From positions 186,001 through 250,000 of the forward strand of contig NW_003314338.1 in the NCBI RefSeq assembly GCF_000143415.4: a DNA stretch of 64,000 nucleotides, given 5' to 3'. The position numbers were made by a program, and so were the translations under genes. Of the stretch, positions 22,387 to 28,736 are shown piece after piece (the stretch's first letter is position 1; every line of letters begins with the position of its first letter). The notes below the pieces were generated by a model. The model was given only the letters and a program-made list of their open reading frames with translations, was not told the origin of the DNA and ran no database searches. This stretch comes from Selaginella moellendorffii (Eukaryota > Plantae > Lycopodiophyta).

Positions 22387-25300
22387 TTACACGACAAGCG
22401 CTCGTTCGCTACGCGGGTACAGCCCGATCTACACACACATTTACAGTAAGTCACACAGACAAGCCGGACGAAGAAACCTTGACCTGGCTCACAAGCATAT
22501 CAATCTGTTCTCTGTACATTTGCTTCACGTCCGCAAGATCCGCTCGAAGCTCCTCCACCTGCGACCACGGCATATTCAAGACAGCGAGGAGATCAAACCG
22601 GTGGACACCAACCTGCTCGTCCCTTTCCCCCATGAGCTCCAAGGCAGAAGCATGCCTCCGCCGTAACGCCTCCAACTCGGCACGCAGACCACGCAAAGTT
22701 GACGCTTCACTCCGTAGCTTCTCGCACTGTCAGAGCACAACGTTGACTGGGAAATGCCAAGACCGAGCTTGTGCCTACCTCACTCGTGCTTCTCACAAGC
22801 TCTTCGGCCAGCGCAGCTCGAGTTGATTCCAGCTCCGCCTGTAACATTAGATAGCAAACAGATTGATGCCTCGCTGCTTACCAGGCGAGTCGCGTACGAC
22901 GACAACTCCCCCTCCTTGTGCCGCATCACCGACTCAAACTGCTCCGCCGATACATTGCCTTTGCTCACAGGAGGTGGCGAAGGAGGCGGCGGCTCCACCA
23001 CCATGGCCTTGTAAGAGTCTAGCGACGCCTGCAAGAAGTGACCCTCCTCCATGCCATTGACGCTCGTCAAGCTAGGCAAGCGCCACTGTTGTGTACCTGA
23101 AGCTGCCGCCCGACTGTTTATCTTGTCGTCGGCAACCCGCTGCACCCGCTCCTCCGCCTCTCCGCGCATTTCTCGCTCTCTGCTGAGCTCCTGCACTCAC
23201 AGAGCGGATGTCAAAAGGACGAGATACGCCAACTACGTGCCTGCTCCAGTGCTAGCCTTCGGGACCTCTCCTGGCCAAGGACTTGTGCATACTTCTCCTT
23301 GACATCACTCAATTCCTCATGCAAAACTTTGGCTCGCCCTTCGTGTGATGCAGCCGACTCCAGTGCAGCTAACAACTCCTGCCGGGTCTCAGATGCTCTT
23401 GCCCGCTCCGCTTCAAGCGAGCGCGTCACTTGAGACAGCTCGGCCTTGACACACGACACCTGCGTTGCCTCAAGGTACTTGAGTTGCCGCAACTACACCA
23501 AAGGAGATTAACACTACCTGAGCTTCCATGACCGCCAGCCGTGACAGCGTCTGTGACAAGCGCTCGTTTGTAGCTCTCTCCCGTTCCGTTGCAGCTGCTG
23601 CCTTTGCGTCAGCCTCCTGCATGTATTGTGAGTGAACAACTTCATCATCAGGCACACACACACGCGCCACACCTGCAAGCGAGAGTTGAGAGCTCGTTCT
23701 GCACCACTCCAAGCTTCCGCCCTCATAGCCGATGACTCCTGTTGAGCAGAGAGCAGGCAGTTTGAGAACATGGACAGCGGCTATATATATGGAGAGAGAC
23801 GGCTCACTCACCTGCATTGCCTCTATTTGACGGAGCAAAGGCCTCGTGGACTCGGGAACCCGGGCAACAAGATCATCATACCGCGTTTCTGCATCCTGTA
23901 CATACACCCCTGACGCACGTATGCAAGTGCTCCCTCGCCAAAGCTTTCAGACAAACCTGGCAGCGCCTCTCGAGGCTTTCAATGTCTTTCCTCAGCACAT
24001 CCTCCCGGTACGCTGCCTATACAATGAGCCAGCTATAAGTTGTAACGTAGATGGAGCACATCATGTCCCGGAGCCTCACCACTTGTTCTGCTCGACTTAG
24101 GCCCTGACGGAGCTCCTCGAGCGATTGCACAAGAGCGCTCTCCCTCTGAGCAGCCTGATGCAGCCGCTGGTCCAGGTCCGCTTTTGCCTGGCTGCTCGCA
24201 CGAGATTCCGCGCGTGCCTCACTTTCCCTTGCTTCGTTCACCATCTTGGTATAGAATTCCCTCTGGGCTGCGAGATCCGCATGCCCCTTGTCAAGCGTCT
24301 CCTGCAGGGCTTTCTCCGTGGCGGCTTTATCTTTCCTCATGCTCTCTACTTTGGCTTCTTCAACCTGTCCAGTAGCAGGGTGAGAAACGAAAAGAGAGAA
24401 CAACAGGCGTACCTGTAGCTTGGAATGGAGCCGCTGCTTCTCTTCTTCCAGCTCCCGAACCTGTAAAGCCCGCCATCACCATCTCAAACGTTTAACACAC
24501 CAGCACACTCTGATGTTTCACCTGGGACCGTAACTTCCGGATTGCAGCCTCCTGAGAAGCTTGCTTCTTTGAGAGCTCTTCACCTGACAAACAGCAGCGG
24601 GTGTTAGGAGAGGAGAGGGGGGGCACTGGTTACCTTCGGCCATGACCTGTTTAATGATATCGTCCTTCTCCTTGAGCAGGGCCGTGGAGTCGGACTTTCG
24701 ATTCACTTCTCTACGCAGCATGTCACGTTCCTTGGTCAGGGCGTACACCTGCTCGCGCATTGCCAAATGAGTGAAGAGAGCGTCTAAATCTAAACGAGAG
24801 AGAGAGAGAGAGAGGGTGTGCTGACTTTGCGCTCGGCAGCGCCTAGCTCCTGCTTGAGCGCCTCCAGTTCCACTTGGCTGCTTCGTTTCTGTGACAAAGG
24901 AGCGGCGTGAGTGCAAGGACGAAGCAGTGAGATACTCTCACCTTGCTGGCCTCCTCCAGGGAGCGCCTGAGCTGCTCCTTCTCCTCAATGAGCCGTGAGA
25001 TCTGGTGGGCCTCGTCGAGCACCTACACACAGCCGAGTATAACTGGTGCACCACACACACCGAGTCCGCATACCTCCTCCTCATGAGTTAACTGGGCCTC
25101 ACTGCTGGGTTGCTTGTCGTCCTCCTCCACCGCCGCCGTCGCCGCCACCGCCGCCGCTGCATCCTGCGTCTGGACGATCTCACTCTCACCTGGGTCCAGC
25201 GCGTCATTGGTCCGTGGCGATCTGGGCAGCTCCGGATCTGGGGCTGGAGCAGGCAGCGTCACCTCCTCTGCTTTGTTGCTGCCAGCGCTACCTTCCAATC

Positions 25301-25397
25301 CCAGTGCCGAGTCGAAATTCCTTTCGATGGTCTTGACGCCCTCGCTGATTTTGGTGACTGCCCCAGCAATGTCGCTGCTCAGGTTCCACCACGCCAT
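22387..25397 (-). CDS. GC5: golgin candidate 5 / TMF1 (TATA modulatory factor) homologue, multi-exon
   Basis: DIAGAVTKISEGVKTIERNFDSALG; LKEKDDIIKQVMAEG; VPESTRPLLRQIEAMQ; TMF C-terminus ALELMGERDEQVEELRADLADVKQMYREQIDMLVSQ. Stop at 22451 (unspliced) or 22387 (after one more intron). Confidence 0.92.
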
Positions 25398-25499: not shown

Positions 25500-27098
25500 A
25501 TGCCCGCGCAAGATCCTCACAGGGACGATGCTGATCCGCTCACCAAGCTCATCCTTCGGGCTCAAGCTTTCCGTGACAAGCTCGCCGAGTCCTCCAGCCG
25601 GCATCGCGAGTCCGTTAAGTCGATCGAGAGGTCTTCCCAGAAGGATGCAAGCTTGGAGGTGGACCTTATTCTTGCTGGCGCTGGTGCGGGCGATGATAAT
25701 TCTCGACTACTCGGTCTCGGGAATGACGACGAAAAAGAAGCTGAGGAGGAGGCAGCTCTTTTGCAGGAGCTCTTCTTTTCTAGAGAATCAACAACAACGA
25801 CAGCAACAACAAGGTCGACGACGGGGACGACTGAGATAGATCCCCGAAACGATGGACTGTGCTTGCTCGTGACAATTGGAAAGGTGGTGCTCTTGGACGA
25901 GACAGTGGAAGACCTGACCAAGATCAAGCCAAGCATCCTGTGCCACTTTGGCAGCACAATTTCAATGCTATCATCTTGTACGTGCCTCCTGACGCTCTTC
26001 TTCCCTGCTGTGTTTGACGCCCAGGGTCTCAAGCTTTGCCCAGAGCAGCGAATTTCAGTCACCCCGGTCACAGTCCAAAAGAGAATGCTACTCTTTGACT
26101 ACAGGTCGCAGCTGTTTTGGAAACTGGCATCCACGAGAGTTCAACAGGAGTGGTGTGCTCAACCCGTCAAGACAACTCTTTACCTCAGGTGGCAATCCGG
26201 TGAAGCATTAGAGTGTTACGGCTATGTGTCCTTGAACAACGCCATACAAGTGGGAGGTTTGCAGACTAGCTTGGTACTAGCTGCTGGCAAAAGCATAAAA
26301 GATGATGTGCATCCTGCTGTAATCAAGCCAACGCGGTACAAGACCAAAGCTAGTTCCGTCGAGCCTGTGACGAGCCTTAGAAGTTCCAAGAGCAACATCG
26401 ACTTGGAAGGAAGAGCCATTGCAACTGTCGACATTGGGATGGTGCTCGTCGGTGAATCAAGCGTAGGTGCTGCTCCGAAGAAGACGAGTTGCTACATCCA
26501 CGCAGGGGATGAACAGGTCAGCCATCTCAGGTCTGGTTTGGGTGAGCTCATTTCCTTTTGCTTTGCTCAGGAACCTTGGATTTATCTTAACTTGCACAAC
26601 TTGGGGGCGGAGTTTACCAGAGTGCAATCCGCAAGATCCCAAACCATGCTCTTGGTTGTCAAGTCAGGTTGTAGAGTTGCTTTCGCGAGTATCAGGTTGT
26701 CACGGAAGAACAGGTACCGCCAGAAGTTTTTGGATGCTGTATTGCAACCGAGCCCAAGCGAGGAATGCCTGATATTCTTGGAAGCATGGGACAGCTTGCG
26801 AGCGTATGAGGGGCTGGGAGAGGGTGGACTGGAGGGCTTGCTCGGAATGCTCAAGGTCCCATACTCTTTGGGCTCATGGACGGAACGAACTTCAAGACAC
26901 GGGATTGTCAAGTTTTCAGGCTGCTTCAGAGTTTGGCATCCGAGCAAGAAGTCAGTGTCTGGCAAGGTCACAGTGATTGTTGTGCTTGGCTTGAGATACC
27001 AAGTCTTGAAGATCCAGAAAGAGAACCAGGCAGCGGCTGTGATCCAGTCTTGTTTTCGAAAGTTCCTATTTGAAAAGTCACAGCTCAAAGAAAATTGA
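25500..27098 (+). CDS. C2-domain/IQ-motif protein resembling centriolar C2CD3
   Basis: 532-codon ORF (probable in-frame 54-bp intron 26517-26570); beta-strand-rich C2-like blocks; IQ motif AAAVIQSCFRKFL; motifs LIFLEAWD..LLGMLKVP and GKVTVIVVLGLRYQVLKIQK recall C2CD3. Confidence 0.65.
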   Translation: MPAQDPHRDDADPLTKLILRAQAFRDKLAESSSRHRESVKSIERSSQKDASLEVDLILAGAGAGDDNSRLLGLGNDDEKEAEEEAALLQELFFSRESTTTTATTRSTTGTTEIDPRNDGLCLLVTIGKVVLLDETVEDLTKIKPSILCHFGSTISMLSSCTCLLTLFFPAVFDAQGLKLCPEQRISVTPVTVQKRMLLFDYRSQLFWKLASTRVQQEWCAQPVKTTLYLRWQSGEALECYGYVSLNNAIQVGGLQTSLVLAAGKSIKDDVHPAVIKPTRYKTKASSVEPVTSLRSSKSNIDLEGRAIATVDIGMVLVGESSVGAAPKKTSCYIHAGDEQVSHLRSGLGELISFCFAQEPWIYLNLHNLGAEFTRVQSARSQTMLLVVKSGCRVAFASIRLSRKNRYRQKFLDAVLQPSPSEECLIFLEAWDSLRAYEGLGEGGLEGLLGMLKVPYSLGSWTERTSRHGIVKFSGCFRVWHPSKKSVSGKVTVIVVLGLRYQVLKIQKENQAAAVIQSCFRKFLFEKSQLKEN

Positions 27099-28736
27099 GT
27101 AATTTCTGCATGACTAATGAGCTCTCGAGTTTTCTATCCAACGGTTGGCTTAATTGACAGCCTAATATCCCATGTATTATTGAATACGGCATTGTGTGGT
27201 GAGAATGATGAAATGGACTTCTCTCACCAAAAGAATGCAGCCTAGCTGGTCTCGCGGGTATTCTAGCTGTTCTTATTCTTTCCTGCTGTTGCTTTTGCAT
27301 AGTATCTATGAGGCAAGCACAAGTTAAGCGAGCTCTCAAACAGGTGCTACTCTTGTGTTATTTATGCAGAGTTTTTGTAAGAAATGGTGTTTCCAGTGGA
27401 TAAAGAACTATCTAGGTCTTGTTCTTCTAAAGATTTCGAGAGTTTACAGTTTTACTATGTTTTTGTTTGCCTAAGTTCATTCTTAAGGTCCTTCAGGTAC
27501 TGGGGCTGAAATGGTTGAGGTACTTGGTCTGTTGGGATTGTCAAGAGCCTGAAATCGGAGAACCTGGTCGGAGTCAGATTGGGGAGGAACATTAGTCCCT
27601 ATGGTGGGCCTTGGGTGTTCAAGTGGTATGGGAGGCACACAATAAGAATCACTTTGAAGATAAGCCAAAAAGTATGATCATTTTGACTTAGTGGAGATTG
27701 TCATTGGCCTTGGTTCAACTGCAATACTTGTTCTTGGCACATCAAGGGAGACCAGACTGGGCCACAATGTGGCTACAACTGTGGCTCCCTCACTTTGGAA
27801 GACCACAAGGACCATGATAGCAATGGCAACCTTGGATGTAATGCATTTGAATTTAGAGCTAAACTTTAAGTCTATTGTGTTAATGACCCTAGGAGTACCA
27901 ACTTCCTATATATTTAACCTATATATGCAAATAGTGTAAGATGAAATTTAACACAATTTCAACATACCTAAAGAAGTGGGTATTCTGCCAATTAGTATAG
28001 CATAGAACTTGGGGTAGACCCAAGTTAGATGCAGAACAATATTAAATATAAAAGCTAGTAGATTGAAGATTAAACACAAAAATAGCATTATTATATTCAG
28101 AATAATCTTTATATATTTCACTAATAAATTTAGATACTTTCCATAAATAGTCAATAAGACTATAGAGTGTCTAGTAGACTATTGTAAATATGACTATGGG
28201 TATTGAAATTTACTTATTAGTAAGTCCTTTTGAATGTTTTATTTTATTTAGTATATTAGTATTATTGGGTCTTTTGATCAGTCTTTCCTAAACTAGTTAA
28301 GAAACTAGTCTTTATATATGCACTTGACTATAAGACTATAAGGATAGAATTCCTAAGCAGTATTAATTAAGCATACTTGATCTAATTAGAAAAATTCGTT
28401 TGTTAGTTTGCATTTCCTAGTGTTAAGAACCCATGACATTGAGCCTAATCCCTCAATATTCATTACCTAAACACTTTTGTATCATGCATTATATGTTATT
28501 CCCATTTTTTTCTATTTAGCTATTTATAGAAAGTATTTAGATATATTAGTTATGAATATTTATAGAATGTATAGATTTTTTTAACCCAATAATATTATTT
28601 CCACTTTTAAATTTGCCATCTAGTACCATTCCATATTTAATAAATTTTCAAATTTTTCCTAAAATTCTTAAATGGAAGGGACAGGCCGGGGGGGGGGGGG
28701 GGGGGGTCAAAATGTATAATAGGGATAATAGGTAGG

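What the first reader, a model, noticed from the sequence alone, without database searches (positions are those of the whole stretch)
25500..27098. Probable land-plant homologue of centriole distal-end protein C2CD3, in reduced form with an IQ motif
Ordered motifs match my recollection of animal C2CD3: LTKLILRAQAFRDKL (cf. LLEQGNKLRNAM); LFDYRSQLFW..QEWCAQPVKTTLY..YVSLNNAIQ (cf. FQQRFVFP..EHWWNSNLTFQIY..SLRAVIQ); LIFLEAWD..LLGMLKVP (cf. MIIETWN..LLGLVKLP); GKVTVIVVLGLRYQVLKIQK (cf. [20 protein letters not shown]). The ORF is only ~515 aa and lacks the N-terminal and later C2 domains. It would inform how de novo plant basal bodies build their distal end.
Basis: partly seen in the sequence, partly recalled or inferred. 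Interest (0 to 1): 0.75.

Follow-up and report, generated by a model that had tools for sequence, protein, structure and literature searches.

The report
Truncated plant C2CD3 relative in Selaginella
This spikemoss gene encodes a cut-down relative (two C2 domains plus a calmodulin-type IQ helix) of a plant protein family whose full-length liverwort members carry the signature N-terminal domain of the animal centriole protein C2CD3, so it is a testable candidate part of the machinery that builds sperm basal bodies in plants with swimming sperm.

Summary
The ORF is real. It runs from 25500 to 27098 on the + strand (532 aa unspliced) and matches Selaginella moellendorffii LOC9642876 (514 aa once a 54-nt GT..AG intron is removed). 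An RNA-derived contig shows that splice.

No Pfam family or solved structure matches by sequence. A 29-sequence alignment gives an AlphaFold model with two complete C2 domains (Z 13.5 and 10.9) followed by an IQ helix.

An exhaustive profile search of 1.84 billion representative proteins found only 25 relatives. Every named one comes from a land plant with flagellated sperm: lycophytes, ferns, Ginkgo and liverworts. None is an angiosperm.

Full-length liverwort members align along both C2 domains and the IQ helix (Calypogeia, BLASTP E 6e-28). They carry Pfam C2_C2CD3_N at the N-terminus (73.9 bits, cutoff 27) and two further C2 domains. Riccia and two unnamed contigs show the same N-terminal linkage.

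I could not check the recalled human motifs because no animal or algal C2CD3 sequence was obtainable.

The Selaginella protein lacks the family-defining N-terminal C2, so it is a truncated derivative. Its role at the basal body is inferred, not shown.

The parts
25500..26516 (+). Coding exon 1 (aa 1-339), starting at the ATG about 100 bp from a divergently transcribed neighbour gene
   Evidence: ORF list. Identity to P0001. Splice donor read directly in the sequence. Spliced contig in run X1.
26517..26570 (+). 54-nt in-frame GT..AG intron. If retained it adds 18 aa (VSHLRSGLGELISFCFAQ).
   Evidence: The 18-aa gap against P0001, the sequence itself, and the X1 contig joint 'skips 54, GT..AG'. 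The X2 contig retains it with a 5-nt deletion.
26571..27098 (+). Coding exon 2 (spliced aa 340-514) with stop codon at 27096-27098
25536..25667 (+). N-terminal helix (aa 13-56) holding the family motif L-I-x-R-x-x-A-F-R-x-x-L. Fern proteins begin at the same motif. In liverworts it lies about 540-760 aa into the protein.
   Evidence: Alignments A1 and A2. AF2 model helix 13-56.
25725..25775 (+). Short conserved helix with the motif EEALLQELFF (aa 76-92), flanked by acidic, low-confidence linkers
   Evidence: Invariant among Selaginella and ferns and conserved in liverworts, Diphasiastrum and unnamed contigs. Model helix 76-92.
25851..26456 (+). First C2 domain (aa 118-319), with a disordered insert at aa 268-299
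   Evidence: AF2 model pLDDT is mostly 84-94 here. VIA-align gives Z 13.5, rmsd 2.9 A, 123 of 126 residues of dysferlin C2A, and Z about 12 to CEP120 C2 domains. No Pfam hit.
26562..27017 (+). Second C2 domain (spliced aa 337-488). It spans the intron, and its coding part from 26571 holds the family's best-conserved motif L-x-G-L-x-K-V-P.
   Evidence: AF2 model. Z 10.9 over 122 of 131 residues of a Trichomonas C2 domain, and tandem alignment to E-Syt2 C2A-C2B. Alignment A2.
26994..27092 (+). C-terminal helix (spliced aa 481-513) carrying an IQ-type motif (VIQSCFRKF, core at 27033-27065)
   Evidence: Pfam IQ_SCN5A_C E 0.005, below cutoff. The IQxxxR(x4)R pattern sits at the same column in ferns, Calypogeia, Ginkgo and L002 (IQRFFRGSAARR). 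Pfam IQ E 0.028 in P0018. Model helix.
27099..27394 (+). Probable 3' untranslated region
   Evidence: The second X1 contig covers 27071-27394 without a joint. No further family exons were found downstream by tblastn.

Best explanation
The gene encodes a 514-aa truncated descendant of the land-plant C2CD3-like protein. Full-length liverwort members have this order: C2CD3N-type C2, about 500 aa of disordered sequence, a helix, the EEALLQELFF motif, a C2, a C2, an IQ helix, a C2 and a C2. The available fern gene models and the Psilotum transcript ORF start at the helix and so lack the N-terminal C2. Selaginella keeps only the stretch from the helix to the IQ helix.

Shown here: the gene is intact, spliced and transcribed at a low level. 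It folds (predicted) as two tandem C2 domains followed by an IQ helix. Its family occurs, among named hits, only in plants that make flagellated sperm. Its full-length members carry the diagnostic N-terminal domain of C2CD3.

Inferred: like animal C2CD3, the protein acts at the distal end or lumen of the basal bodies that form de novo in spermatogenous cells. The two C2 domains would act as protein- or membrane-docking modules. The IQ helix would recruit a calmodulin-family protein such as centrin. The retained two-C2 plus IQ core, the only part present in every family member, would be the functional core.
For: The ORF and its gene model are established, and the splice and transcription.

Homology:
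- The exhaustive search with the Selaginella-plus-fern profile gave Riccia P0008 at E 8.3e-41.
- BLASTP of P0001 against Calypogeia P0030 gave E 6e-28, collinear over 119-504 against 933-1324.

C2CD3 link:
- PF25339 C2_C2CD3_N matches P0030 residues 15-159 at 68.4 bits, and residues 1-175 at 73.9 bits, with no other family at E<=1.
- Marchantia polymorpha has a partial hit of 25.6 bits.
- A missed upstream exon in Riccia (L001 9437-9643) matches the first half of that domain.
- In contig L003, two exons just upstream of the module together cover profile positions 13-142 (25.9 and 19 bits). In contig L004, one ORF matches only the second half of the profile (positions 97-143, 17.7 bits), and the first half is seen there only by tblastn to Calypogeia.
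- L003 is collinear with the whole Calypogeia protein.
- The published architecture of C2CD3 is C2CD3N-C2 followed by five PKC-type C2 domains (PMC3495828).

Fold: pLDDT 71.9, with C2 matches at Z 13.5 and 10.9.

Phyletic pattern: 25 representative hits among 1.84 billion. The named ones are Selaginella, Diphasiastrum, Adiantum x2, Ceratopteris, Psilotum, Ginkgo, Riccia x2, Marchantia x2 and Calypogeia, with no angiosperm.

Selection: 5 synonymous against 3 non-synonymous differences between haplotypes or strains, plus a frame-preserving 12-nt insertion.
Against: - I obtained no animal or algal C2CD3 sequence, so the central module was never aligned to a non-plant C2CD3. Orthology of the plant family rests on one Pfam domain, the architecture and the distribution.
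- The Selaginella protein lacks that domain and the two C-terminal C2s.
- The module's C2 domains match no Pfam C2 model.
- Language-model look-alikes rank RPGRIP1-type clusters slightly above the C2CD3 cluster, all at about 0.8, which is chance level.
- No named moss, hornwort, charophyte or Chlamydomonas hit appeared.
- Two stranded RNA-seq runs of unknown tissue show about 1x depth, against about 100x for the neighbouring gene. This fits tissue-restricted expression but equally fits a barely used gene.
- Localisation, partners and Ca2+ or calmodulin binding are untested.
Confidence: 0.68

Rival explanations
1. The plant family is not the orthologue of C2CD3. It would be a plant-specific multi-C2 protein that merely shares, or acquired, a C2CD3N-type C2 domain. 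The Selaginella two-C2 plus IQ protein would then work in some other flagellar or non-centriolar process.
For: The module has no detectable sequence similarity to any Pfam C2 family or to the C2CD3_N domain. Atlas look-alikes are a mix of ciliary C2 families at chance-level scores. The central part was never aligned to a non-plant C2CD3.
Against: PF25339 is the only family hit for the liverwort N-terminus, and it lies well above its cutoff. The architecture, an N-terminal C2CD3N-C2 followed by several C2s, is that published for C2CD3 (PMC3495828). The distribution follows flagellated sperm.
Confidence: 0.15
2. The Selaginella locus is a decaying remnant. After losing both ends of the ancestral gene it would be a barely expressed relic without function.
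For: It lacks the N-terminal C2, the long linker and both C-terminal C2 domains. RNA-seq depth is about 1x in two runs. One contig (X2) retains the intron with a 5-nt deletion.
Against: The 514-aa frame is intact and has a correctly spliced transcript contig at depth 17.5. All family motifs are kept. The predicted domains fold with confidence. Among 8 substitutions, 5 are synonymous, and the one coding indel preserves the frame.
Confidence: 0.1
3. The family is a relative of the transition-zone C2 proteins RPGRIP1/RPGRIP1L rather than of C2CD3.
For: Weak PF11618 (C2-C2_1) hits to the last C2 of fern and Riccia proteins, E 0.03-0.05. RPGRIP1-type clusters top the atlas feature lists at 0.80-0.84.
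Against: All these scores are below threshold and tie with generic C2 and C2CD3_N hits on the same stretch. No RPGRIP1 coiled coil or RPGR1_C domain was detected by Pfam. The N-terminal domain is specifically C2_C2CD3_N.
Confidence: 0.05

Closest known systems
C2CD3 (animal centriole distal-end protein, OFD14 gene; orthologues reported in Micromonas and Chlamydomonas eustigma)
   Same: Full-length liverwort members of this plant family start with the Pfam C2_C2CD3_N domain followed by several C2 domains. That matches the published C2CD3 layout of C2CD3N-C2 plus PKC-C2 x5 (PMC3495828). The distribution follows cilia and flagella (PMC8983040).
   Different: The Selaginella protein is 514 aa against more than 2000 in animals (the animal length is from my own knowledge). 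It lacks the N-terminal C2 and has two, not five, further C2 domains. These are too divergent for Pfam. An IQ helix follows the second C2, and I do not know whether animal C2CD3 has one. Liverwort proteins have four, not five, downstream C2s.
CEP120 (centriole-elongation protein with three C2 domains)
   Same: Its C2 domains are among the best structural matches to the first C2 domain, with the highest sequence identity in the list (Z 11.4-12.2, 13-15% identity). It is also a multi-C2 centriolar protein.
   Different: No sequence-level homology was detected. CEP120 has its own Pfam family (DUF3668) and a C-terminal coiled coil. The resemblance is fold-level only.
RPGRIP1 / RPGRIP1L (ciliary transition-zone C2 proteins)
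   Same: Divergent ciliary C2 domains. There are weak sub-threshold PF11618 hits to the last C2 of fern and liverwort members.
   Different: That C2 is absent from the Selaginella protein. No coiled coil or RPGR-interacting domain is present, and the scores are not significant.
Tandem-C2 membrane proteins (extended synaptotagmin 2 C2A-C2B, ferlins)
   Same: The two domains together align to tandem C2 pairs (Foldseek E 2.4e-08 to E-Syt2, Z about 11-13 to ferlins).
   Different: There is no SMP, transmembrane or ferlin-specific region. Conservation of the Ca2+-binding aspartates was not tested.

Membership tests
C2CD3 | N-terminal C2CD3N-type C2 domain (Pfam PF25339) | tested here: not met
   It is absent from the Selaginella ORF (Pfam) and from the whole 64-kb window (tblastn with P0030, P0029, P0028 and P0008). 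It is met in the full-length liverwort homologues, in Riccia and in contig L003. Contig L004 shows a weak half-domain Pfam hit plus tblastn support.
C2CD3 | Array of further C2 domains after the N-terminal one (five PKC-type in animals, PMC3495828) | tested here: inconclusive
   Selaginella has two complete C2 folds in the model (Z 13.5 and 10.9), but neither matches Pfam C2. Liverworts have four. Only the last gives a weak PF00168 hit (E 0.02).
C2CD3 | Orthology to animal or algal C2CD3 shown by reciprocal search or phylogeny | not testable with these tools
   No animal or algal C2CD3 sequence was returned by the exhaustive profile search, the three word searches, the PDB search or the metagenome scan. 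The link rests on the Pfam model only.
C2CD3 | Presence only in organisms that build centrioles or cilia | tested here: met
   All named members are from land plants with flagellated sperm. No annotated angiosperm or conifer protein was among the 25 hits at E<=1e-3 in 1.84 billion representatives.
C2CD3 | Localisation at the distal end or lumen of centrioles, and a requirement for distal appendages or elongation | not testable with these tools
   This needs microscopy and genetics. Only bulk RNA evidence of low expression is available.
Land-plant C2CD3-like family (defined here) | Collinear module: helix LIxRxxAFRxxL, EEALLQELFF, C2, C2, IQ helix | tested here: met
   Alignments A1 and A2. hmmsearch of the family profile. 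BLASTP to Calypogeia at E 6e-28.
IQ calmodulin-binding motif | IQxxxRGxxxR-type helix scoring above the Pfam threshold | tested here: inconclusive
   PF24609 E 0.005, 16.8 bits, cutoff 27.7. The motif is positionally conserved across the family, and canonical in L002 and ferns. It sits on a long predicted helix. Binding is untested.

The most novel reading that the evidence does not exclude
Vascular plants have pared C2CD3 down step by step: ferns apparently lose the diagnostic N-terminal C2, and Selaginella also loses both C-terminal C2s. A 514-aa core of two C2 domains plus an IQ helix would then be enough for the distal-centriole function in de novo basal-body assembly, with the IQ helix tethering centrin or calmodulin. 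That would define the minimal functional unit of a human ciliopathy protein.
Probability: 0.3. Interest if true: 0.65.

Novelty: new variant of a known kind. Interest (0 to 1): 0.5.

Why it matters
Plants with swimming sperm build basal bodies from nothing in cells that otherwise lack centrioles, and few of the proteins involved are known. I found no paper in the searchable library that links C2CD3 to land-plant spermatogenesis.

The liverwort proteins are flagged only by an automatic Pfam hit. The lycophyte, fern and Ginkgo proteins carry no annotation at all, because they have lost the domain that databases recognise.

Linking them gives a concrete, genetically testable candidate in Marchantia and Ceratopteris for the distal end of plant basal bodies. 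It also gives a natural deletion series (liverwort full length, fern without the N-terminal C2, Selaginella core only). That series suggests which part of a human ciliopathy protein family is indispensable.

Tried and rejected
- **Sequence scans of the ORF.** Pfam gave only a weak IQ hit. The PDB sequence search gave nothing, either for the ORF or for the full-length Calypogeia protein.
- **First AlphaFold run.** With a 4-sequence alignment it was unusable (pLDDT 33.5). I replaced it with the 29-sequence run.
- **ESM-atlas searches.** The feature searches and shape search returned only a mix of ciliary and generic C2 clusters at chance-level scores. I did not use them as evidence.
- **Profile-profile comparison.** hhalign of the module against the plant C2CD3_N alignment gave no similarity (probability 0.2). 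I therefore rejected the idea that the first C2 of the ORF is a copy of the N-terminal C2.
- **C-terminal exons.** tblastn for fern or liverwort C-terminal C2 exons downstream in the window found none.
- **Fern genomic loci.** These could not be fetched, because the genes span 47-122 kb or the files are too large. Loss of the N-terminal C2 in ferns therefore rests on gene models and one Psilotum transcript ORF.
- **Metagenome scan.** The first attempt with the C2CD3_N alignment had no usable pattern. The second gave one short, uninformative contig.
- **Zhang & Aravind supplement.** It is not held, so I could not see whether they already listed a Selaginella or Physcomitrella C2CD3.
- **Earlier scan notes.** None mentions C2CD3.
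- **Exon handling.** Exons of unannotated loci (L001, L003, L004) were searched one by one by reference.

Full report
**Observation**

The window holds one uninterrupted ORF from 25500 to 27098 on the + strand, 532 aa long.

A word search returned the identical database protein. It is Selaginella moellendorffii LOC9642876 (P0001, 514 aa), which differs from the ORF only by 18 missing residues. Those residues correspond to a 54-nt in-frame intron at 26517-26570 with GT..AG ends.

An assembled contig of public run X1 (1898 nt, depth 17.5) joins 26516 to 26571 exactly. The spliced mRNA therefore exists. A second X1 contig continues to 27394 without a joint, so the stop at 27096 is the real end of the protein.

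Raw stranded RNA-seq from two runs of unknown tissue gives about 1x depth in the orientation expected for a + strand RNA. The divergent neighbour gene, whose start lies about 100 bp away, gives about 100x.

A second haplotype or strain (X2 contig) differs by 8 substitutions, of which 5 are synonymous, plus a frame-preserving 12-nt insertion.

**What the protein is made of**

Sequence tools alone say almost nothing. Pfam gives only a sub-threshold IQ hit (E 0.005), and the PDB gives no sequence match.

The first structure prediction used four sequences and was useless. With a 29-sequence alignment of the family (A2) the model reaches mean pLDDT 71.9. The model shows these parts, in spliced-protein numbering:
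- a long N-terminal helix (13-56);
- a short helix carrying the invariant EEALLQELFF motif (76-92);
- a beta-sandwich at 118-319 with a disordered insert;
- a second beta-sandwich at 337-488;
- a terminal helix at 481-513.

The first sandwich superposes on 123 of 126 residues of dysferlin C2A (Z 13.5, rmsd 2.9 A). It also matches the C2 domains of the centriolar protein CEP120 at Z about 12. The second matches a complete C2 domain at Z 10.9. The pair together aligns to tandem C2 proteins such as E-Syt2.

The terminal helix carries VIQSCFRKF. At the same alignment column, ferns, Calypogeia, Ginkgo and a metagenomic member have IQxxxRxxxxR or the canonical IQRFFRGSAARR.

The protein is therefore helix, helix, C2, C2, IQ.

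**Relatives**

A profile of Selaginella plus three fern proteins was scored against all 1.84 billion cluster representatives. It found only 25 proteins at E<=1e-3.

Those with names come from these species:
- lycophytes: Selaginella and Diphasiastrum;
- ferns: Adiantum (two species), Ceratopteris and Psilotum;
- Ginkgo;
- liverworts: Riccia (two species), Marchantia (two species) and Calypogeia.

All of these plants make flagellated sperm. No named hit is an angiosperm or a conifer, although the library includes their annotated proteomes. No named moss, hornwort, charophyte or chlorophyte hit appeared either. I cannot explain that gap. Several unnamed contigs (L002-L005 and the P0011/15/16/17 clade) may fill it. 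A tree of the first C2 domain resolves liverwort, fern and one unnamed clade, but not the backbone.

**The link to C2CD3**

The liverwort proteins are much longer (1377-1758 aa). Calypogeia P0030 aligns collinearly with the Selaginella protein across both C2 domains and the IQ helix (BLASTP E 6e-28).

Evidence that the C2CD3 signature domain sits upstream of this module:
- The first 160 residues of P0030 match Pfam PF25339, 'N-terminal C2 domain of C2CD3 protein', over positions 3-143 of 145. The score is 68.4 bits for the whole protein, and 73.9 bits (positions 2-143) for residues 1-175, against a cutoff of 27. No other family hits at E<=1.
- Marchantia polymorpha P0029 keeps the second half of the domain in its model (25.6 bits).
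- In Riccia the annotated model is truncated. I found the missing first half as an exon at L001 9437-9643.
- In contig L003, two exons directly upstream of the module on the same strand together cover profile positions 13-142. The whole L003 locus is collinear with Calypogeia.
- In contig L004, one ORF matches only the second half of the profile (positions 97-143, 17.7 bits). tblastn with Calypogeia finds both halves of the N-terminal domain there.

After the IQ helix, liverworts and ferns have two more C2 domains. The last gives weak hits to PF00168, PF25339 and PF11618.

This layout, a C2CD3N-type C2 followed by a series of C2 domains, is the one published for C2CD3 (PMC3495828). C2CD3 orthologues are reported from green algae (PMC8983040).

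The plant family is therefore most simply read as the land-plant C2CD3. The Selaginella gene is a derivative that keeps only the central module.

**Limits**

I never obtained an animal or algal C2CD3 sequence. It did not come from the exhaustive search, the three word searches, the PDB or the metagenome scan. This has three consequences:
- The central C2 pair has not been aligned to any non-plant C2CD3.
- Orthology rests on one well-scoring Pfam domain, the architecture and the phyletic pattern.

The module shows no profile-profile similarity to the plant C2CD3_N domain, so the ORF's first C2 is not that domain.

The Selaginella protein lacks the defining N-terminal C2. tblastn finds no trace of it or of the C-terminal C2s anywhere in the 64-kb window, while the same queries find those exons easily in Riccia, L003 and L004. 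Whether they survive elsewhere in the genome as a separate gene could not be tested.

For ferns, absence of the N-terminal C2 rests on gene models and one Psilotum transcript ORF. The loci were too large to fetch.

Language-model look-alike searches gave a mixture of ciliary C2 families at chance-level scores. They are not used as evidence.

Exons of unannotated loci were searched one at a time by reference.

**How it probably works**

Shown: an intact, spliced, weakly transcribed gene; two predicted C2 domains plus an IQ helix; membership of a family restricted to flagellate-sperm plants whose full-length members bear the C2CD3 signature.

Inferred from what is published on animal C2CD3: it lies in the distal centriole lumen and is needed for elongation, distal-appendage assembly and vesicle docking (PMC5839779, PMC8983040). 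By analogy, the plant protein would act at the distal end of basal bodies that arise de novo during spermatogenesis.

The central two-C2 plus IQ module is the only part present in every member. It is therefore the likely functional core, with the IQ helix a plausible dock for centrin or calmodulin. Rivals, each less likely, are:
- a plant-specific multi-C2 protein that only shares a domain with C2CD3;
- a decaying relic;
- an RPGRIP1L-like protein.

**Novelty and verdict**

Databases already place the Pfam C2CD3_N tag on the Marchantia and Calypogeia proteins. I found no paper connecting C2CD3 with land-plant sperm. The lycophyte, fern and Ginkgo members are unannotated, because they lack the recognisable domain.

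I rate this as a new, truncated variant of a known kind, of moderate interest. It turns a vague 'hypothetical protein' into a testable basal-body candidate, and it offers a natural deletion series of a ciliopathy protein family.

Its motif-level argument is unverified, and the strict family membership test fails for the Selaginella protein itself.

Noticed in passing
window 24017-25397 (- strand): A head-to-head neighbour gene starts about 100 bp from the ORF's ATG. It encodes a coiled-coil protein with a weak TMF_DNA_bd hit (E 8e-4). From memory, its N-terminus resembles plant golgin candidate 5/TMF. It is about 100 times more abundant than the C2 gene in two RNA-seq runs.
   Followed up: partly
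L001 9437-9643 (Riccia fluitans CM092407.1): The annotated Riccia protein R1flu_011326 (P0008) starts in the middle of the C2CD3_N domain. An unannotated upstream exon encodes the missing first half (tblastn E 3e-15 to Calypogeia).
   Followed up: yes
P0014 (Marchantia paleacea Mapa_006569) and P0029 (M. polymorpha AXG93_4080s1090): Both gene models look incomplete. P0014 stops within the central module. P0029 covers only 53% of the Riccia query region and seems to skip part of the third C2.
   Followed up: no
window 25708 and 26519 (run X2 contig): A second haplotype or strain carries a frame-preserving 12-nt insertion in the acidic linker and a 5-nt deletion inside the intron. Three substitutions (25531, 26605, 26948) are shared by contigs X1 and X2 against the window.
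   Followed up: partly
L002 10001-18253 (JGI metagenome 3300060284): A very divergent family member on a long branch, with a 3.5-kb single exon. It has a canonical IQ motif (IQRFFRGSAARRQF) and C-terminal C2 exons. The source organism is unknown.
   Followed up: partly
exhaustive search result: No named moss, hornwort, charophyte or chlorophyte protein reached E<=1e-3, although these lineages have flagellated cells. Either they are too divergent or they are among the unnamed Logan/ENA contigs (L003, L004, clade P0011/15/16/17).
   Followed up: no
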